NCBI RefSeq assembly: GCF_002113885.1
Contig: NW_018407082.1
Location: 762,490-826,489, forward strand
DNA from: Mizuhopecten yessoensis
Lineage: Eukaryota
Direction: 5' to 3'
DNA length: 64,000 bases
Positions 424-15,800 of the stretch are shown piece after piece. Each line of letters starts with the position of its first letter. The first letter of the stretch is position 1. The notes beneath the pieces are model-generated. The model worked only from the letters and a program-made list of their open reading frames with translations, did no database searches and had not been told where the DNA came from. Position numbers and translations under genes: made by a program.

Positions 424-753
424 TTAAGGATCACCATACCACTACCAAAGCCTTGTTCAATCATTTCTGAAAATATATCCATACTTTGTCATGCTTGTAT
501 GAAAAAAGAGAGAAAAAAAAATGAATTTCCGAGTGAAAAAATTACACTGGGACTAGACCGGAATTTGACCCCTTGACCTCATACCATTATACTGTTGCAC
601 TGACCAACTGAGCTCCTTGGTCAACAGAGGTATCCTGGACTATTTCAGCTGTCATGATATCAAAAATTAAATTAAAGGGAGGTTACTCTATATACAGAAA
701 AAATACAGTGGAACTCTTTAGTGTTTTGTCTGCAGTGGTATGGGAGTCCTTAA
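424..753 (-). mobile_element. Kolobok-like non-autonomous DNA transposon with an internal tRNA-like module
   Basis: TTAA-GGATCACCATACCACTAC ... GCAGTGGTATGGGAGTCC-TTAA imperfect TIRs; homologous in reverse to 21016-21475. Confidence 0.6.
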
Positions 754-1967
754 CTGTTAAGGGTGTACAGTCAGTGTTGTGGCTGAGATAACATAAGTTA
801 TTAAATCAGAACCTTTGTTTGGCACACGCTTCTGACATCACTGCCACACAAGCACGTTTCAGTTCACACTAGGCTGAAATTCTCACTGAGAAATGTTTCC
901 ACATACACTATGTTTTCAGTAACACGCTTCGTCTTTCTTATTCTTTGATATGCTATTATCCATACTGGATAATAAATTAAAAATCAGGGTAAAGATTAAA
1001 AGGTATGGACATTTTAAATAGGTGTAGTATTGACAATATGTACCAGAAAAAAATATTACAGGGTGAATTATAAACAAAGCCACAGATTCATTTTCAGGTG
1101 TTGAAGTTTGACAGACAGAAAAACAATTCCAACTAATGTTTTTGCAACAGTCCTCCTTATTTATTGAAATCTTAAACTATTTTGTAGTATCTCTATGTTG
1201 TCTTATCTGAACAGATGAAGTAAATTATAGTTTGACAGGACAAGGATTCCTGTAGAGCCTTGCTATTTATGGGTAGATTTCCAGGGTGATCTCTTCCACA
1301 TTTCACATTCCATAACTATTATGAAGATTTTCTGTTTGTTATAGAAAAACAAACATTTAAGGAAGTAGGGTGCTCTTTACATATAAATGAACTGCAAATA
1401 CAATTTGATTGTCAGAATAAAGTTTCATCAGTTTGGTTTGAATAATAACACAAACAGGAATTGAAAACTTGAATTTATTTTCCTACAAATACAATAAAAG
1501 GTTGAATTGTGCTATACCTTAAACTCTCTTAGAGATAGCTGCTCTTCATCTTTCTACAAAAGAAAAAAGTAACTTCAAACTCTCTGTTGGTACAATGTAG
1601 CTATCACACAGGTATACAGTGCTTTACCCTGCATGCTGTAATACCCAGAGATTTACAACTATAGTTCAATTTTCGTAAAGTACTAACTTTCATTTAATCA
1701 GGAGTCTCTCCCCCACCCCCCACCCCCCACCCCCATGGCTTAAAAACTTGCAATATTCACCATAGAATTCACAATATGGCGGTTTTGTATTTATTATGGT
1801 GTATTCAATTTTAGGGAAATAAAGTTTGATATGATTGTATAACTGTTAGTGCTCTTCAATACGAAGTATTCAGATGTTTTGAACTTTTATAAATTTGGAA
1901 TGTTTAACTATTTTGTTGGCCAGTGTTGTATCTTGCTATGATAAGCATCCTTTATATTTTTCCACAG

Positions 1968-1982
1968 CCTGTCAAAGATAAG
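1968..1982 (+). CDS. Candidate 15-nt microexon (PVKDK) in FARP FERM C-lobe
   Basis: Strong pyrimidine tract ending tttttccacag|; AAG|gtgaga donor; phase 0/0 matches the host intron; shares 16 nt across the donor with 4685-4720. Confidence 0.6.
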
Positions 1983-2609
1983 GTGAGATAGTTAACGATC
2001 AAGTTTGACACTTTTCTGTAGTATGGGAGAATTATTTGCAGAATGCACAGAAATGCTGGTTAACGCTTCAGATTTGCACTTGCTTAATACTTCAATTGTA
2101 ATTCTATACAAGTTCTTCAATACATTTCTATGATTGATCATATGTCAAAATGTCTCGGAAGATTAATTTTCCATGGTAACATTACGTACCAAACTCAAAT
2201 TATACATTGGAGTTTCTGTAAACTATAATTTTCACACTTGGATCTTTCAAAAAGAGACTTTCCTAGCATTGAATATTCCTTCTGTGTAAATTTTGGTTAC
2301 TTAAGGTGTCTTCTGTGAAATGTTTCAAAAACATCAACCTCTTGCTTTAAATTAATCACATTTGGTTGTGCCAAAAGAATGGAAAATATAGCAGAGGTGA
2401 ACTTTTTTCCGTTATACATGTTGCAGCCAATTATTCAGATCTGTTGACAACACTAAGCAGATGTAAAACTGAAGATTTAATCTATATAGATTTCTCTGCT
2501 CTTTGTCGATGAATAACCCACACTCAGTACTATAGAGTAACCAACTTCAGTGAGATGCTATGAACTAGAAATGTGCATGATATTTTTTATTGCATTTTTG
2601 GGATATTTG

Positions 2610-4470
2610 AGCTCCAGGATTTCTCCTAGGTTTTCAATAAACATCCTCTAGCTGTTTTATAGATTTGGGATTTCCTCACTCACACTGGTTTACAGGTTTG
2701 GGATTTATTTCCCAAAGCATTTTAACAGATTTAGACTTCCCTTTATCGGTATACAGGGTAGGAATTTCCTTCCCCTAGATGTTTTAACAGATTCGTGATT
2801 TCCCCTTGCTTTTAAACAGTTTTACGATTTCCCTTAGCTGTTTTACAAGTTTGGAATTCCCTATACTGGTTTTAAAGGTTTGGGACTTATCCAAGCAGTT
2901 TTTAGGTCACCTGAGACAAAGTCTCAAGTGACCTATTGCGATCGCCTTTTGTCGGGCGTCATCCGTCGTCCGTCCGTAAACAATTTACATTTTCGACTTC
3001 TTCTCCAAAACCCCTGAGCCAATTTCAATGAAATTTTGCAGAAATCTTCCATGGCCAAAGGTCAACAAAAATAGTTGCCGGTTTGGTCCCTGGCCCCCAG
3101 GGGCCTGAGGGGCGGGGCCAAAAATGGTCAAATTGACTAAAATTTCAAAAATCTTCTCAAGACCCAGATATGGTAGAATCAAATACTCTTCATAGATTGA
3201 AGGGTCTTAAGGTGTTCTACCAAAATTGTGATTTTCTTGACCCTGGGGTCTCACTGGGGAGGGGGTAAACTTTACTATAGTTTATATAGGGAAATCACAT
3301 TTTTGATCAACATTGTTTAATTTCCATTGGAAGTAATTAAATTTAGGTTAGCATTATCAGTATTGGGTAGCAGTTTGATGGTATGCACATATGAGCCCTG
3401 ACTGACCCCTTGGGGCTGATGGGAGGGGCTAAAAAGGGTTGATTTGACTGAAATTTCAAAAAAAAAAAAAAATCTTCTCAAAGACCCAGATAAGGTAGAA
3501 TCAAACACTCTTCATAGATGGAAAGGTCTTAAGATTTATGACCCTAGGGTCTCATTTTTACCCCCTGGGGAAGGAGGGGGGCAACATTTATAATGGTTTA
3601 TAATGGCAAATGATTCTTTGGATATTACATGTTTATAACTTGATTGGAATTATAACCTTGAGTTGACAGTTTGATACTTTGAACATTTTGAGCCAGCCCT
3701 ACCCCCAAGGGCTGTAGGGTGGGGCCCAAAGGAATCGGTGTGCTATTTTTTTTTCATTTTCCTTGTTTAGGATCAGAGGTGCTAGTTTCCAATTCTTTTT
3801 AGTCTTAAATCTGTATGTTAGATATTGAATAAGGTGGTTTTATTGTTTTTTGTCACTGAATGATATTTCTGTTTGTGTTAAAAACAATATCAACTCTCAG
3901 TATAAATACATCAGGTGACCGCTAAGGCCCATGGGCCTCTTGTATATGTTTTATATTCCCCCTAACTGTTTTACAGGTTTTGGTTTCCCCCTAGATATTA
4001 ATAGGTTTGGGATTACCCCTAGCTGTTTTATAGGTTAACCATTTTTATAGGTTTTTGATTTCCTGTAATAATTTTATTTTGCATAGGGTTTTCCCTCTGC
4101 AATTAAACAACTAGGTTCTGGATTTCCCTAGCTGGTTTTGCAGAACTGGGATTTCCCATTACAGTTAAACAGGTTTTGAATTTCCCCTGTTTTACAGATT
4201 TGGAATTTTCTCTAGCTGTTTTACAGGTTTGGGATTACCTCTAGCTGTTCTACAGGTTTGGGATTACCACTAGCTGTTTTACAGGTTTGGGAATACCTCT
4301 AGCTGTTTTACAGGTTTGGGATTACCTCTAGCAGTTTTACAGGTTTGGGATTACCTTTAGCTGTTTTACAGGTTTGGGATTACCTCTAGCTGTTTTACAG
4401 GTTTGGGATTTTCACTTGTTGTTTCACATATTTGGGAAGTTTTCCTGGGTGTTTGTCAGATTTGGGTTAT
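2610..4470. repeat. 29-bp minisatellite interrupted by the HINE at 2899-3943
   Basis: Unit CTAGCTGTTTTACAGGTTTGGGATTACCT; near-perfect copies at 4212-4410, degenerate elsewhere and on both sides of the HINE. Confidence 0.85.
2899..3943 (+). mobile_element. HINE-like (non-autonomous Helentron) element
   Basis: T-run, then subTIR AGGTCACCTGA with a local hairpin, (CCGT)n microsatellite, diverged central repeats, 3' subTIR TCAGGTGACC and terminal palindrome AGGCCCATGGGCCT. Confidence 0.78.
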
Positions 4471-4684
4471 GTTTTGTTCCTGTCATTTATCAATGATAAA
4501 TGTAGAGTGTAGAGGAATTGAAGATGAGATTATAAGACATAATGAGTAAGGTTAAGTAATGTTAGTTCTTCAGAGGTAAGTTGATTGCATTGTCTGAATA
4601 TACAGCCCATAGCTTCAATTTTCTAACTACCTTGTACAACGTGGAGGCCAGGGCTCAATATGATGGAATTATTTATTTAAACAG

Positions 4685-4720
4685 GGTGCATCTGTTTCAT
4701 CACCGACATTCAAAGATAAG
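4685..4720 (+). CDS. Candidate 36-nt mini-exon (GASVSSPTFKDK) in FARP FERM C-lobe
   Basis: aaacag| acceptor (weaker tract); AAG|gtgagg donor; phase 0/0; no stop codon. Confidence 0.5.
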
Positions 4721-6657
4721 GTGAGGTTAAGCTAGAATCTAGTTTATGCTTTACCCTGATGGCTACAAATTGAATGAAATGTTTTGAAACTTTTTGCATT
4801 ATCTGAAATGCATGATAAATTTTGTTATTGTGTTTGATGGAACAATGGTTACAGTATGTTCAAAGTGATAGTTAAAAAAAGTAAGAAAAAAACACCTCAA
4901 AGCTGAACTGCATGCGTCTCTTCTTGCGCTTGATTAGTTGCTATGGAAACAAACATACATGCCAATTAGATGTTTTGGTGTTGAAATTTTTAACTAATAT
5001 TTGTAGACAACAGAAATAATTTCATTATCCTTAGCTTTTGTATCGTTAAACAAAGATAGGTTTGTGTGTGTATTTTTTGGGGGTGAATAACACTAACTAG
5101 CATGGCTCCAACTCATTTTGTGACAATGCTCACCTTGTTGATTGGTATAGTACAGTTACATCTGTACAGAATTTAATAAACTTTAGAACTTCATTGTCAC
5201 ATACTCAAATTGGATAATCTTAGCTTGTCACCTTGTTATTGCATGGGGGGGGTTATTATGTTCCAGAATTGGCATATATGTGTTACATGCCTTGTTCCTA
5301 CTCTGCATCTGCTTCCGTCTTTTGTTACTCTGTGGTCCTAAATGATAGACTTGAGTACAGACTGATCTTCAGGGAAAGAAGGAACTTTTCAAAAGCACTG
5401 GTCCTTGATTGATGAACAGTAATATAGATATGCTTGCTTCAATATGGTATCTGACTAAAACTGAAAATAAAATGAATTTATTTATTTACGAACAACGCCA
5501 ACAGATTTTCTTATACATATAGATGTTATATTTTAATATATAGTGTTCATTGCTAGCACCAAGGCCATCCATAATTAGGTTCGTGTAAGGCACTAAGTAT
5601 CAAGCCTTGAAAAGGATCTATATAAAAAAAAAAAGTTTGCTTGCAGTCAACTAGAAACTATTTCAGCTTGTCAGTTGCTGCAACACAGCAGCATATTATT
5701 TAACTGTTTTTTTCTCTCAATGAGTGTTGTACATAGTTTCCATAAAAGATAGTTCTGATGAAGGAAAGAACTCTGTTACATTTTCTTTTCACCATTTGTA
5801 TGCTGGAGTATGATGCTGGCCTTGTGAATGCTTGTGTCATTGATACAGTGTACAGCTTATCTAAATTCATCTAGCCGATTAATATTACCTGTTTATTTGT
5901 TTGTCTATTTTTATTCGACAGTGTAGGTACTATAGATAAGAATGCTGGACATTAAAAGTCTCCTCAATTTCTTCTCGTTCACTGAAATTGTACTGAAGAC
6001 ATTTAAAATTTTCTGTGTGATTATGATGCATTTGATTTTATTCTTAATACAACATAGACTGTCATTGTGACCAAAAAAGATTATTTCTTGGTATGCCTAG
6101 CTTTTACTTCCCCTCTCCCTGTCACATACTGTGTTACCGCATGTGAGGATTCGGAAGACTGTCATATTTATTTGTTGAATTTGTATACCAATGTTTCTGT
6201 AGTGTAGAGACATCATTTGTTTGGCATGATTTTTCTAACAACTTTACAGTCATTTGGTGGTTTATGTAAAGGGGAGATAACTCTGATGGATACGGAGGTC
6301 ATTTGTCCCTTGTAATTAGTCTTTTGTATTTATAGACATCTGGATAATGAATATATCATTGTGTATGAAATCAGTAAATAATGTCAACCTTTACAACTAG
6401 TCTCCTTTATGCAGGTGTTATTCAACATTTGTGACTTTTACACTTTGGACTAAAATTATGAACCTCTGCCAAAAAAAAATAAAAAATGCAAAGACTTAGA
6501 AATGTGATGTCTGAAATAATTTTGATTTGTAGAATTTTTGAAAATTATCTTTTACTTTAAGTTTTACACCTGTTAAAATTGATACACAGTTTTCTCCACG
6601 GTCATCCAAAAGTTCTATTGTTTTGTGATTGGCTAAATTCTCTTTCTTTGTTTCCAG

Positions 6658-6818
6658 GGTTACTATAAAGACACTGTGGAATTCTTCTTTGAGAGTAGGG
6701 ATGAGTGTAAGATATTCTGGAAAAAATGTATCGAACATCACGCATTCTTTCGTTGTCATACCATAAAAAAGACGCCTAGAAACAAGACACGACTGGTCAG
6801 CCGAGGCTCCTCCTTCAG
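6658..6818 (+). CDS. FARP2: FARP exon: end of FERM C-lobe and start of FA domain ([11 protein letters not shown]...SRGSSF)
   Basis: tttccag|GGT acceptor; TTCAG|gtacgg donor; phase 0 to 2. Confidence 0.95.
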
Positions 6819-9800: not shown

Positions 9801-12800
9801 AGTATGTATGATTCAGCAAAGAAGTTGAAGCAGATGTGTGTGTTGTTGCTGAGAGTGTGATAGATCATAGTTCATCCTTCAGAGGTTTAATTATGTAACT
9901 GTGTAATGGTAAATGCTGAGAGATTTACTTGTTCAATTGGTGTAGCATCAGAGGATCTTTGTTGTCGTTGTTAAGATTCACCCCTGAAGACACATTCGAA
10001 CTTGTCCAATTCAAAGGTTGGAATAGTTCATTATGAAATTTCAGGGTTTCACCAATCGTGTATATGTTGTTTAGTACCTGTAGTTTTAGGGTTTTGTAGA
10101 TATTTGTTTATATTGAGGTATTCATACACTATTGGTCACTGTTTCTACTACTAAACACCGGCAAGTAGATATGTAGTATTGTCATTTATATGAGACACAA
10201 TGTGAGAGACCTGTTTTGTGGAGTTCTGTAGAACTTAGATTCTGTATTAAGGGTCCATCAGAGGGGGAGGGGGAATGTCATCAGAGCCCCTTGTCAGTCT
10301 GAAATTACAGATAGAGATTAACATTTACAACATATCAAAGAATGAATTTTACAGGTTGAATAATTGGATTTCCTTTCCTATTATTTTCTATGTGTCATTA
10401 TGCTGTATTAAATCTCTGTGTATTATGTATATGCTGTAAAAATAGAAATTCTCGCCTATGGAATTGTTTGCATTGCGACTTTACAAAATGATTGGGGTTT
10501 TGGCTTTAGCATTGGTTCATAAATGTATATGTTATATAGTTTTATAATCTGCATAATTTATATATTTTTCTATAGAAATTTTCATGCCAATTTTGTCAGA
10601 AGGGAAGAACATCAGCATTGCCATGCTGTGATAATTTTAACTTTTACAGTATGTAAAAACTTCCAGCTAATACAGCAAGTTTTCTGCATCTTAGCCAATT
10701 TGACTTTGTTTTTGCTAACTGTATTGGATTTGTCTTGATATGTAGTAAGCTAAAAACTTTGATGAAGTCGAAGAAAAATACCATAAAACTGTTCTCATGC
10801 CTAAACTCAGATTCTGTGCTCATGTCCGATTTCTTGTTCAGGTGATAAATTGATAAAAAATATTCATTTTGTCAATGATCTGGTAGGAATTTTAAGACTT
10901 AGCACCAAATACCACTTTTAGTTTTTAAACTGGACTTTCTGACCTTGTCACATCATTAAAATGAGTTACAAAAATGTTGTATTGAGCACAGAATCCATGC
11001 TTGAACATGAGAATGATTTCATGAATATGAACCTTGTGTTCCTCATAATTCTCCCCGATGTAATCTTTGTACCTATTCTGTACTTTCTCGCCACCATGCC
11101 AACCCTGTGTTAATATACTTTAACTGTATATTGTAGGTCTGTCAGTGGGCGTATCTCATGTAGCCGGAGTGCCAGTGTTACACCTAAGATCTCAGCTAAG
11201 GCGGGGCTCCACAACTCTACCACAGACACTCACAACAGCACCGCATCCAGCGGCTCACACATCCTGTCCCCGGGGCTTGATGACCCGACCACACCAAGTC
11301 GCACAGAGACAGCCGAAGTCCACAGTGTGGACAGCTCGCTGTCTGGCAGTCGGTCACTCCCATCGCCAAAGCTTGACCGCAGCAGAGAGGGAACGCCTGG
11401 AGCTGAGGTTGACCTTCCCGATGACGATGGTGTGGCTTCCCCAGAGAGCAGAGTCGACAGAATCGACGAAAGAGGTGCCACTTCTACTTTTGTTACTAAT
11501 GCTATAGTATCTGCACCGCTAGATAGCAATCCTAATAATAACCAAAATGTGTCAGCCAATCAAAATGCAAATGACAATGATGAAAACAGCCAATCACAAT
11601 CTTTCTCTCTTTTTAAAGATGGGAAGGTTAAAAAATTAGATGAAAGTTCTATGGATACTGAGAATAATTTGTCTGCTACCTTCCCTACTAAACCACACCT
11701 AACCAAAGATATAGAGCATGTTAATAGTTCTGGTGAGGGACCAACAAAACCTAACCTCTCTAGTACAGATACTCTGCCCTCTAATCTTAAACATAATGTA
11801 CAAGATTCCTCCCCCGAGGGGCTGGGGACCTTTTCATACCAAAAGTCCCCAAACTCGACCCTCGGCAGGGAGCACAAAAAGGTTGTGTTTGCCGATGATA
11901 TTAGTTCCCATCCGACGCCAGGTAAGGTTTCTGAGGGGGAATGTAAGCAAGGCGAGATTGTCAAAGGTAAGAATAAACAGGAAACTGTTGTCAAGACAGG
12001 TTCTATGCATGTTAATGAGGAAAAGGGAAAATCAATCGGTCATGAGAAGCCATTAAGAAAATTAGTCCATCAAGACTCCGGAAAATCCTTGAGCAAGCAG
12101 GATAGCTTGACAAAAAAATCTACCAATCTTGAAAAAGGAGGAGGAATTTTATACAAGGGGGAAATAGTTTCCAGTTTCGATAGAAAAGCTGACAGGAAAC
12201 TGATGAAACAGGATAATGTAATAAATGAGGACATGCCAACAAACAAAGACCTGGCTACTGATAAGGCTTCCAAGAAACTGTCACACAAAGAGCTGGTCGC
12301 TGATAATACCTCTAGGGAACTACCGCAGAAAGAGGTTACCACTGATAATGTGTCGAGGAAACTGCCTCAAAGGGAAGAAGCCGCTGAAAATGTGTCCAGA
12401 AAGCTGCCACAAAGGGAAGAAGCCGCTGAAAATGTGTCCAGAAAGCTGCCACAAGACGTCTCCAGCGATAAGGCTGCTAGGAAAGGTAGTGTTACAAGGG
12501 AAAGTCCAGATAAAAAAGCAGTGCAACAAGAACTGAAGAAAATGGACAGCTTTGGTAAGGCTGAGGTCACCTATCCTAAACGTACTGGTAGCATAGAGAA
12601 ATTACAAAAACTTGACCTGAATACAGGAAGTGACGCAGAAAAACCTGTTAGAACCGAGAAGGAAAGTGAGGATAAATGTAAGAATGAGCTTAACAAGAAC
12701 AGGGGTGGAAAAAATACTGGACTAAATGGTGGGGAAAACATGATTGGGGATATACCATATCTCCTACATCGGCGCCACCTGGAAAAAAGCCCTGAACCTG

Positions 12801-15800
12801 TCAAAACAGAGGAGGTAACTTCGCCAACAGACATGGATGAGATCATATCGAACAGGAGGAGCAGAAGCTTGAAGAAGAAACGGCCGTCAAACATGCAGGT
12901 GCATCAGGTTAAAGTTTACGAGGGGTCTCTTCCTGTCGTACCGGACAAGGGAAAGACAGAAGTCAAATCTCCTGTGAGCGAGGGCAACAGTCCAGTCAGT
13001 CCAGTTAGTGGCGGGGGAAGTCCCTGTAGTGACACTTCCAGCCTGGGCAGTGTGGCAGGCAGCCCTGTTACTCCGGGGAGTGGTGTGGGCAGTCCTGTGA
13101 GTCCAGGTAGTCGAGGGGCCAGTCCCATCAGCCCAGGTAGTCGAGGGGCCAGTCCTATCAGCCCAGGTAGTCTACAACAGAGGATAGGCAGTCGTTCACC
13201 CTCAGGAAAGCGGGGATACCAGAGCCGATCCCCATCAGGTAAACGTACACCATCCCGAACGTCCAATGACAGGTCGCCATCTTGTAACCGGCGGATGGAG
13301 ATTGTCAATTATCACCGGCTGCCCCATAGAGATAGCTTCTCAAGCGTAGACGATACCACAAGTCCCACATTTGAGAAAGACATATTAAAACAGATTCAAA
13401 ATAAAGAAAACATCAAAGAAAATGATTCTGCATTTTCAGAATGTAACGGAGAGGTTATCAAAGATGGGACTACACTGCCCCCTCCACTTTCTGTAGCTAA
13501 GGTGCCACTGTCAAGTCATCAAGCTAGCGAGGATAATAAATCTAATAATAATCTAGAAATGGTGGAAGACATCACAGTTGTCCAAAATAAGCTTAACGAC
13601 AACCTGGAGAAGCGTCTCTCTGAGGACAAACTCGCTAGAAAGGAAGCAACAGGGTTGCCAACAGATTCAAAGATGTATGGCCTTCCTCAACATATAACAC
13701 AGCAAGTTCAGCATTCTTATAAGGCTACCAGTGATAACCCTAAAATGGCTAAGGCCAATAACCCTTCAGTAGTAAATGCGTGTCAATCTGGAGATGATCC
13801 AAAAAATGTCAGGTCCAGTAACCCTACGCCAGTCAGCTGTCAACCAGGAGAGAGGGGTAAACCTGGGGTATATATAAGTAGACCTGAACCTTCCAAAGTG
13901 GGTAGTGTACAAACCGCTGTCAACAAGACTTCAGCTTTCCATATGAAAAATCCTGATAAAAAAGCTAAGGAACCCTTTAGTCCTGTATATAGACCGACTT
14001 TTAGTTTGAAGCAGAGTAAAGACTCTGCTCTTTCTGCTCCAAAACAAGAAGAAACACAACCAAAAATCACAACAAAGAAATTAAACACCGACGGAAAAGA
14101 TAATACCTCGGTTCGCACTAAACCAGCTTTACCATGTCGAAAGCCTGCTTTACCAGGTAAAAAGCCAGAAATAATGAGCAAGAAACCAGCTCTACCAGGA
14201 AAAAGACAAGATCAACAAACTAAAAGGACGAATGCATCAAGAAAAGCTGATCAGGTGAGTTTGGATTTTTCATCCCCAGCGGCAGATTTTATATTATCAG
14301 AAACAGACTATGCAAGTAAACCCAATCGGAACAGCATTACATTTTCTACTTTTAAACCCCCAGACTCCAACTCAACATCGCCACGGCCACTCAGCCTAGT
14401 CAGTGTTGATGAGAATGAGGAGGAACCATCAATTTCACTTGCAGCCGACAAGGATCCTACGGTAAGGCTTAATCAGACTTTCCACGCACATCCTCCAGAG
14501 AATGTGTTCCGCCCAAGTCCAAAGCCAAAGCTGAAACTGGGGCGACACCCGAGCGATCAGGGCATTGAAGGTTCAAAGGTCAATGAGCCACGAAAGTTCC
14601 ACAAAGAACGTGGCTACATGTACAGTTTTGAGAGCGTCAATGATCCCCCTAGTGCTCAGATGTTTTTGAGTGGATCAACAGATACGGACGTCCAAGGAAG
14701 TCCAGAGAGTGTGGAGTCGGTGGATATGCTGGAACCTCTGGAAAACCTGGAGGAAAATATCTCTGATGGGTCAGAATCTTCGGTATCCGAAGGGAGCAAC
14801 TCAGAGTTTGGGGATGACAGTGAACACGAATGTGACAGTAGTGATAACGATGATGCTGAAAGACATAAAGAATTCTTACAATTTGCCAAAAGTTTAGCTG
14901 ACTCTGGCAAAGAAATCACAGTTGATTCTGGTGTTGGTATCGAGTTATCTGACTCTGGTATTAAGGATAATTCCCCGTTAGATCCTCTGGATCAGCTAGA
15001 GACTTTGGAAGGGTCGGTTTACGAGGATGAGAATCAAAACTTACCTCCACGCAATGACAATAATGGAAAAAGGCATTACACTAACACAACGTTAAGTTCA
15101 AGTTCGGATGAATCTTACCATGAGAGGATTGTTCGGAACAAGCGGGTAAGCGTGGACCCCCTGGAGAGTCTTGAGAATCCCCATATAGCAGAGCTGGCAT
15201 CACTTAGTGGAGATTCATATAGCGATGAATGTGATTCCGACGATCACATGACCTCCAGACACAGACTTGGGGCCGCCATTCCAATCCTCACCATCAGTAC
15301 TGCATCAAGTCCAGACGACCCTCACAGGAGCCCCTCAAGTTCCCTTGACAACGAAATTAGCCAATCAAATCCTTCTTAGATATATGAATTGTACAGTATA
15401 TTATTTGTTACGACATGATTACTCTTCTTGTAATTAGCATATTATTGAAACATGATGGAGATACAATTTTGTATTATATTGATTTCATTTTTGACTGCAG
15501 ATTTTTTTGATTTTTTAAATGTTTTTAGTTTTTGCATGATCAGCACAATTTAAGCATGAGGCGCTAGAAGCATTATATTTATACATAAAAATATACTATG
15601 TATATGTACATTTACATACATTTCGTTTTTTAATTTATCTTGTTTTGTTGTGCATGATGAAAGGTGCAATTTGTTATATTTTGCTGAAGTAGGGTTTTTT
15701 CAGTCATTTTGATTTACGTTTGTTTATTTCAGTTTTATTTACAAATGGATGTCCAATTTTGTTTACATATTGTTGAACCTTTTTTGTTGATATTTTAGAG

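What the first reader, a model, noticed from the sequence alone, without database searches (positions are those of the whole stretch)
1968..4725. Pair of apparently duplicated, frame-preserving microexons (PVKDK and GASVSSPTFKDK) in the FERM C-lobe
Seen: TCAAAGATAAG|GTGAG (16 nt) occurs identically at two places 2.7 kb apart in otherwise unrelated intron sequence. Each is preceded by a CAG acceptor at a multiple of 3 (15 and 36 nt), is stop-free in phase 0 (the phase of the intron before GYYKDTVEF), and ends in the codons for KDK. Known: microexons often insert into surface loops of interaction domains and are frequently neural-regulated; this position is a loop in the PTB-like F3 lobe that binds receptor tails. 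Inference: a duplicated, possibly mutually exclusive or additive microexon switch that tunes FERM ligand binding, easily missed by annotation.
Basis: partly seen in the sequence, partly recalled or inferred. Interest (0 to 1): 0.7.

Follow-up and report, generated by a model that had tools for sequence, protein, structure and literature searches.

The report
Two real FARP FERM-loop microexons
The two tiny candidate exons are real, alternatively spliced and additive, and they lengthen a surface loop of the FERM domain of a scallop FARP (FERM-RhoGEF) protein, but public annotation already lists all four isoforms, so this is a correct reading of an ordinary, already recorded feature.

Summary
The 16-mer is at window 1972-1987 and 4710-4725, and it occurs only three times in the 988-Mb genome.

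- **What the two sites are.** They are the 3' ends of two phase-0 cassette exons. A is 1968-1982 (15 nt, PVKDK). B is 4685-4720 (36 nt, GASVSSPTFKDK).
- **Where they sit.** Both lie in the intron between the FERM_C exon that ends 155 nt before the window and the exon at 6658.
- **Annotation.** RefSeq already lists all four combinations for this gene (Mizuhopecten yessoensis FARP1-like X1-X4), and the original gene model contains both exons.
- **RNA evidence.** Spliced contigs from three studies read upstream exon, A, B. A fourth study lacks A and most simply B too. The exons are therefore additive, not mutually exclusive.
- **Conservation.** Both exons and their intron flanks are conserved in Pecten, Argopecten and Ylistrum. 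A-like 5-residue exons occur in mussels and oysters.
- **Origin of B.** B carries a fossil copy of A's acceptor (23/25 identity in two scallops). It is most likely an old tandem copy of A that switched to an acceptor 21 nt upstream.
- **Structure.** The insert lies in a loop predicted disordered between strands beta6 and beta7 of lobe F3. That loop is not the ligand groove.
- **Not tested.** Neural regulation and any effect on binding remain untested.

The parts
1932..1967 (+). Conserved polypyrimidine tract and CAG acceptor upstream of microexon A
   Evidence: The blastn block window 1932-2089 is 89% identical to Pecten maximus. The four-scallop alignment shows a nearly invariant tract ending in CACAG.
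1968..1982 (+). Microexon A, 15 nt, phase 0, encodes PVKDK
   Evidence: Sequence read. Present in RefSeq isoforms X1 and X3 and absent from X2 and X4. RNA contigs of three studies carry its letters between the upstream exon and B (tables 5 and 5c). Orthologous exons with CAG..GTGAG exist in four scallops and in Mytilus edulis.
1983..1987 (+). Donor GTGAG of A
2013..2089 (+). Nearly invariant, UGC-rich intronic block downstream of A; candidate splicing regulatory element
   Evidence: Four-genus alignment. No covariation was found, so no RNA structure is claimed.
4651..4684 (+). Conserved upstream flank and CAG acceptor of B
   Evidence: The blastn block 4651-4839 is 81% identical to P. maximus; alignment.
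4685..4720 (+). Short cassette exon B, 36 nt, phase 0, encodes GASVSSPTFKDK
   Evidence: Sequence read. Present in RefSeq X1 and X2 and absent from X3 and X4. The RNA joint from the upstream exon through A lands on it in runs X1, X6 and X7. Orthologues in Pecten, Argopecten and Ylistrum read GTSVSSQ[A/T/P]FKDK.
4701..4705 (+). Fossil of A's acceptor inside B. It reads CACCG here and CACAG in Pecten and Ylistrum
   Evidence: Donor-anchored comparison of A and B: 21/25 identity here, 23/25 in Pecten and Ylistrum, 19/25 in Argopecten.
4721..4725 (+). Donor GTGAG of B
4809..4814 (+). TGCATG 89 nt downstream of B; its GCATG core is conserved in all four scallops (Rbfox-type motif)
   Evidence: That it binds a factor is inference only.
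6658..6818 (+). Constitutive downstream FERM_C exon (GYYKDTVEF...; strand beta7 and helix alpha1 of F3)
   Evidence: It matches Pfam FERM_C positions 54-89 and aligns to zebrafish FARP2 chain 6d21_A residues 250-301.

Best explanation
The window holds part of the scallop FARP gene, which encodes FERM-FA-DH-PH-PH. The phase-0 intron that splits the FERM_C domain between ...KLHPESY and GYYKDTVEF... contains two independently includable cassette exons. A is 15 nt and B is 36 nt. Together they give four isoforms with 0, 5, 12 or 17 extra residues. This much is shown.

B is most likely an old tandem copy of the A unit. That unit was a pyrimidine tract, CACAG, 15 nt and GTGAG. The copy was made before the four sampled scallop genera split. 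It later came to use an acceptor 21 nt further upstream, so its former pyrimidine tract now encodes SVSS. This is inferred from a 23/25 match that includes a fossil acceptor.

The extra residues lengthen the loop between strands beta6 and beta7 of lobe F3, which the model predicts to be disordered. They add lysines, and B adds a Ser-rich stretch. The secondary-structure position and low confidence are shown by the model.

The likely role is regulated, tissue-dependent tuning of the F3 surface, meaning membrane or partner engagement, or a phosphorylation handle. It probably acts through conserved intronic elements, including a GCAUG downstream of B. This last step is inferred and not tested.
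For: - **Sequence and phase:**
- **Annotated isoforms:** XP_021358602 (+A+B), XP_021358604 (B only), XP_021358605 (A only) and XP_021358606 (neither) differ exactly by these peptides.
- **RNA:** contigs with a GT..AG joint between upstream exons prove spliced RNA. In runs X1, X6 and X7 (three studies) the upstream exon end joins B with the A letters in between. Run X2 has a contig that leaves the upstream exon without A, and nothing is laid on B.
- **Conservation:** A and B have the same splice sites in Pecten, Argopecten and Ylistrum, and the flanks are conserved while most of the intron does not align.
- **Wider relatives:** A-like exons occur in mussels (PGKAK) and oysters (VSGQK), with both included and skipped forms, some from transcript assemblies.
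- **Duplication:** 23/25 identity including CACAG in Pecten and Ylistrum. The local A-versus-B score is 19, against 11.3 +/- 1.7 for shuffles.
- **Structure:** strands 245-251 and 254-259, then residues 262-285 with pLDDT below 50, then strand 287-291 and helix 295-307. Solved FARP FERM domains have the skip-form loop length.
Against: - No tissue information was available, so regulated or neural inclusion is unproven.
- Contigs cannot give inclusion levels.
- The A-only and B-only forms were not seen in the four runs laid. In this species they rest on RefSeq models. A-only also rests on other scallops and one transcript assembly.
- Outside the 25-nt core, A and B flanks are no more alike than shuffles. 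Duplication therefore rests on a short stretch that is also constrained by splice signals and by the shared KDK peptide.
- The loop is not the known ligand groove or the KRKR lipid patch, so a functional effect is not implied by position.
Confidence: 0.85

Rival explanations
1. Chance pseudo-exons: AG...GT stop-free stretches that are never spliced in.
For: Such stretches are common. There are 120 phase-0 AG..GT candidates of 9-60 nt in the mussel intron alone.
Against: Spliced RNA contigs contain both exons. Four RefSeq isoforms exist. The exons are conserved with their splice sites in four genera.
Confidence: 0.01
2. The 16-mer belongs to a dispersed repeat, such as a transposon fragment.
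For: The same intron does hold a dispersed element and a minisatellite.
Against: There are only 3 copies of the 16-mer in the whole genome. The repeats lie between the two exons and do not overlap them.
Confidence: 0.01
3. A and B arose independently. Their shared end reflects convergence on the same peptide end (hydrophobic-K-D-K), the same codons and a strong AAG|GTGAG donor.
For: Eight of the 16 shared bases are near-consensus donor sequence. The flanks beyond the core are not significantly alike. Other lineages have unrelated second exons in the same intron.
Against: The match includes a non-functional CACAG in register with A's acceptor inside B, giving 23/25 identity in two species. Convergence does not predict this.
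Confidence: 0.12
4. A mutually exclusive pair, the usual fate of tandemly duplicated exons.
For: Tandem exon duplicates are often mutually exclusive (general knowledge).
Against: Co-inclusion is seen directly in RNA from three studies. It is also annotated in four scallop species.
Confidence: 0.02
5. Real but functionally neutral: tolerated splicing variation in a disordered loop.
For: The loop is predicted disordered. Insert sequences differ widely between phyla. Solved vertebrate FERM domains lack any insert.
Against: The peptide cores (PVK[D/E]K, SVSS, FKDK) are invariant across four genera. The intron flanks are as conserved as coding exons. The same intron carries cassette exons in many protostome lineages.
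Confidence: 0.12

Closest known systems
Cassette microexons in surface loops of interaction domains (the neuronal microexon programmes of vertebrates and flies, e.g. PMC8797185)
   Same: The exons are very short, frame-preserving and alternatively included. They are conserved together with their flanking intron sequence, and they insert into a surface loop of a protein-interaction domain.
   Different: Neural specificity and dependence on the eMIC/Srrm factor were not tested. The UGC motif near A's acceptor is present in only three of the four scallops. B, at 36 nt, exceeds the strict 3-27 nt definition. No paper in the library links FARP or Cdep to a microexon.
Tandem exon duplication
   Same: Adjacent exons share the same phase and a common core, and the copy keeps a fossil acceptor.
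   Different: The copies are co-included rather than mutually exclusive. The copy changed length (15 to 36 nt) by a shift of acceptor.
Vertebrate FARP1/FARP2 FERM domains (PDB 6d2q, 6d2k, 6d21; PMC6041286)
   Same: The proteins are orthologous. The KRKR lipid-binding loop and the neighbouring strands are nearly identical.
   Different: The crystallised proteins have the skip-form loop. No insert at this position is described there.
RefSeq models XP_021358602/4/5/6 of this very gene and their counterparts in Pecten, Argopecten and Ylistrum
   Same: Identical exons and all four combinations.
   Different: Nothing at the exon level. The annotation carries no statement on origin, conservation or function.

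Membership tests
Alternative cassette microexon | Canonical AG/GT splice sites and preserved reading frame | tested here: met
   CAG...GTGAG at both exons. They are 15 and 36 nt, phase 0 and stop-free.
Alternative cassette microexon | Length of at most 27 nt (strict definition) | tested here: inconclusive
   A (15 nt) meets it. B (36 nt) qualifies only under looser definitions.
Alternative cassette microexon | Both inclusion and skipping occur in RNA | tested here: met
   +A+B contigs occur in three studies. In a fourth, a contig lacks A and nothing is laid on B. Included and skipped proteins from transcript assemblies exist in relatives.
Alternative cassette microexon | Conservation of the exon and of flanking intron sequence | tested here: met
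Neural (eMIC/Srrm-dependent) microexon programme | Neuron-specific inclusion | not testable with these tools
   Run and sample names are coded, only contigs were available, and the single read-laying run was used.
Neural (eMIC/Srrm-dependent) microexon programme | UGC motif close to the 3' splice site | tested here: inconclusive
   A TGC lies about 30-35 nt upstream of A in three of the four scallops but not in Pecten. None lies near B's acceptor.
Rbfox-type regulated exon | Conserved GCAUG in the downstream intron | tested here: met
   GCATG 89-90 nt downstream of B sits in an aligned column in all four scallops. Binding and effect were not tested.
Tandem exon duplication | Sequence similarity between neighbouring exons of the same phase | tested here: met
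   19-23 of 25 positions match in four species, including a fossil acceptor. The local alignment score is about 4.6 SD above the shuffle mean (19 against 11.3 +/- 1.7), reached by 1 of 500 shuffles.
Tandem exon duplication | Mutually exclusive use (typical, not obligatory) | tested here: not met
   The two exons are co-included.
FARP (FERM, RhoGEF, pleckstrin) protein family | FERM + FA + DH + two PH domains, and close similarity to FARP1/2 | tested here: met
   Precomputed Pfam domains of the protein cluster that holds this gene's products. PDB FARP2 DH-PH-PH matches at E=2.5e-193 and the FARP FERM at E=3e-96.

The most novel reading that the evidence does not exclude
The phase-0 intron in the F3 beta6-beta7 loop of FARP is an ancient, protostome-wide hotspot for short cassette exons. 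Haliotis has VSK and VNGAW, decapods have GE and LPYGGRWPE, Lineus has several, and Owenia and Aplysia each have 16 residues. Under this reading the loop is a general, tissue-regulated control point for how FARP meets the membrane or its receptors. The scallop pair would then show how new modules arise there, by copying an exon unit and shifting its acceptor.
Probability: 0.3. Interest if true: 0.5.

Novelty: already known. Interest (0 to 1): 0.27.

Why it matters
The finding shows that reading sequence alone can correctly pick out 15-nt and 36-nt exons. Biologically it is a textbook kind of feature, and it is already in RefSeq for this and three other scallops.

Two things are not on record in the literature searched:
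- **How B was made.** The fossil acceptor inside B gives a clean small example of a new cassette exon arising from a copy of its neighbour.
- **A recurrent site.** The same FERM loop intron carries short cassette exons in many protostomes.

If the inserts change membrane or receptor engagement of FARP, a synapse and guidance GEF, this would give a simple handle on isoform-specific signalling. That remains to be tested.

Tried and rejected
- **Dispersed repeat:** rejected, with only 3 copies in the genome.
- **Chance:** rejected.
- **Homology of A and B beyond the 25-nt core:** upstream and downstream flanks were compared in all 16 species pairs and give z of about 0-1, with a maximum of 2.7. 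The wider gapped alignment is therefore not relied on beyond the core.
- **Conserved RNA structure in the block downstream of A:** 36 pairs were predicted with no compensatory change, so nothing is claimed.
- **A derived from the start of the downstream exon (YKDT versus VKDK):** the best ungapped identity is about 42%, which is not above chance.
- **A B-like exon in the Mytilus edulis intron:** none was found ending in K with a GTRAG donor.
- **Literature:** nothing links FARP or Cdep to microexons. The only Cdep entry in the fly neural-exon table is a 5,804-nt exon.
- **Spliced model:** I built no joined spliced model of the gene. Exons were searched by reference, and full-length database proteins were used instead.
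- **Large search:** the large representative-protein search was not used, as advised.
Full report
**Observation.** The 16-mer is present exactly twice in the window, at 1972-1987 and 4710-4725. No further match appears with two mismatches allowed, and shuffling expects 0.10. The sequence shows ...ccacag|CCTGTCAAAGATAAG|gtgaga at 1968-1982. It shows ...aaacag|GGT...AAAGATAAG|gtgagg at 4685-4720. In the whole 988-Mb assembly the 16-mer occurs three times, two of them here, so it is not a dispersed repeat. The window is G000:C3755:762490-826489.

**Gene context and phase.**
- The exon at 6658-6818 begins on a full codon (GGT TAC TAT...). It matches Pfam FERM_C positions 54-89.
- The exon that matches FERM_C positions 1-55 lies just outside the window, at L004:9691-9846. 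It ends ...KLHPESY|gtaagt on a full codon, 155 nt before window position 1.
The Pfam domain is complete without the candidates, so they would be insertions at model position 54/55.
The homologues found here confirm that.

**Are they real exons?** I built no joined spliced model and used database proteins instead.
- A word search with the long downstream exon, followed by a cluster look-up, returned the RefSeq products of this very contig, Mizuhopecten yessoensis.
- X2 has B only, X3 has A only, and X4 has neither.
- Pecten maximus and Argopecten irradians have +A+B, +A and neither. Ylistrum balloti has +A+B.
- The claim that annotation would miss these exons is therefore wrong.

- All four runs have a contig with a GT..AG joint 260>860, so they are spliced RNA.
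- In X1, X6 and X7 (three studies) the contig leaves the upstream exon at 1015 and lands at 5852. The 13 letters CCTGTCAAAGATA lie in between. Position 5852-5853 is the AG before B, which equals the last two letters of A.
- The contigs therefore read upstream exon, then A in full, then B.
- In X2 the contig runs one letter (G) past the upstream exon. It has no joint to B, and nothing is laid on B. A is therefore skipped, and most simply B too.
- Contigs cannot give levels, and the sample names are coded, so tissue specificity could not be addressed.

**Conservation.** The orthologous introns of Pecten (L009), Argopecten (L010), Ylistrum (L011) and Mytilus edulis (L012) were fetched.
- A and B are present with CAG and GTGAG in all four scallops. 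Mytilus has A only (PGKAK).
- Against Pecten, most of the 6.8-kb intron does not align. Window 1932-2089 around A is 89% identical and 4651-4839 around B is 81% identical, comparable to the coding exons at 86-91%.
- Downstream of A lies a nearly invariant, UGC-rich block (2013-2089).
- 89 nt downstream of B lies a TGCATG whose GCATG core is conserved in all four.
- These features are typical of regulated exons, but their action is inferred.

**Duplication.** Aligned on the donor, the last 20 nt before the donor plus GTGAG match between A and B as follows:

| Species | Identity |
|---|---|
| Mizuhopecten | 21/25 |
| Pecten | 23/25 |
| Ylistrum | 23/25 |
| Argopecten | 19/25 |

- In Pecten and Ylistrum, B contains CACAG exactly where A has its acceptor. 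In this window it has become CACCG (4701-4705).
- The 16-mer identity is shared by three of the four species. It is therefore ancestral and maintained, not recent.
- Beyond the core the flanks are not significantly alike.
- The simplest account is an old tandem copy of the A unit that came to use an acceptor 21 nt upstream, which turned its pyrimidine tract into the SVSS-coding part of B.
- A is the older exon, because mussels and oysters have only an A-like 15-nt exon.

**Wider distribution.** A second word search with the FERM part of X1 and further cluster look-ups show that the junction ...KLHPE[S/G]Y|GYYKD... is almost invariant across protostomes. The same site carries alternative inserts in many lineages:
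- Haliotis: none, VSK, or VSK+VNGAW.
- Patella: VSTK.
- Babylonia: 15 residues.
- Aplysia: 16 residues.
- Owenia: 16 residues.
- Lineus: several combinations.
- Decapods: GE and/or LPYG[G/V]RWPE.
- Insects, spiders, heterodont bivalves and others among the listed proteins show only the skip form.

**Structure.**
- Solved zebrafish and mouse FARP FERM domains align without a gap across the junction. Chain 6d21_A residues 198-248 match the upstream exon and 250-301 match the downstream exon, so they represent the skip form.
- PMC6041286 places the lipid-binding KRKR motif in the beta5-beta6 loop. It places the receptor-tail groove between beta5 and the last helix.
- An AlphaFold model of X1 was built from a 35-sequence alignment, with FERM pLDDT mostly 72-93.
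- The model gives strands 245-251 and 254-259 with KRKR at 251-254, then residues 262-285 below pLDDT 50, then strand 287-291 and helix 295-307.
- The 17 inserted residues (265-281) thus lie in a loop between beta6 and beta7 that the model predicts with low confidence. That loop is at the other end of strand beta6 from the KRKR loop and is not part of the groove.
- A functional effect is possible, because a 17-residue lysine- and serine-rich tether could reach either site. It is not implied by position.

**Verdict.**
- The core interpretation is supported: real, additive, duplicated, alternatively spliced short exons in an F3 loop.
- 'Mutually exclusive' and 'missed by annotation' are refuted.
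- Neural regulation and ligand tuning are untested.
- The exons are already recorded in public annotation and are of a well-known kind. The fossil acceptor and the recurrent use of this intron across protostomes are the only additions.

Noticed in passing
window 2899-3935: A dispersed element of about 1.04 kb. It has inverted termini (GGTCACCTG ... CAGGTGACC) and an internal duplication of about 320 nt. Many full-length copies of 88-91% identity exist, with 4,152 first-look candidates genome-wide. It is absent from the orthologous Pecten intron and very abundant in RNA contigs (depth in the thousands). It looks like a MITE-type transposon inserted into the minisatellite.
   Followed up: partly
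window 2645-2895 and 3955-4450: A 29-nt minisatellite (unit CTGTTTTACAGGTTTGGGATTACCTCTAG) split by the transposon above. A related array lies at the same place in the Pecten maximus intron (L009:41425-42250), so the array is old.
   Followed up: partly
window 449-760: A short dispersed repeat. It has 40 scored matches at 69-87% identity and 558 first-look candidates in the genome. It is probably a SINE-like element.
   Followed up: no
P0049 (Littorina saxatilis XP_070173491): This model repeats the whole block from GYYKD to the end of the FERM/FA region twice in tandem. It is probably an assembly or annotation artefact, so its 16-residue 'insert' should not be trusted.
   Followed up: no
window 11137-15379 (sibling finding s1-507938): In supplementary file 4 of PMC8797185 the Drosophila FARP orthologue Cdep has a 5,804-nt exon labelled 'Neural'. 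This may correspond to the long-tail exon described for this gene.
   Followed up: no
G000:C1165:1360717-1360732: The only other copy of the 16-mer in the genome. One copy is about what base composition predicts by chance.
   Followed up: no
window 1710-1734: A (CCCCCAC)n microsatellite with 3.6 copies.
   Followed up: no
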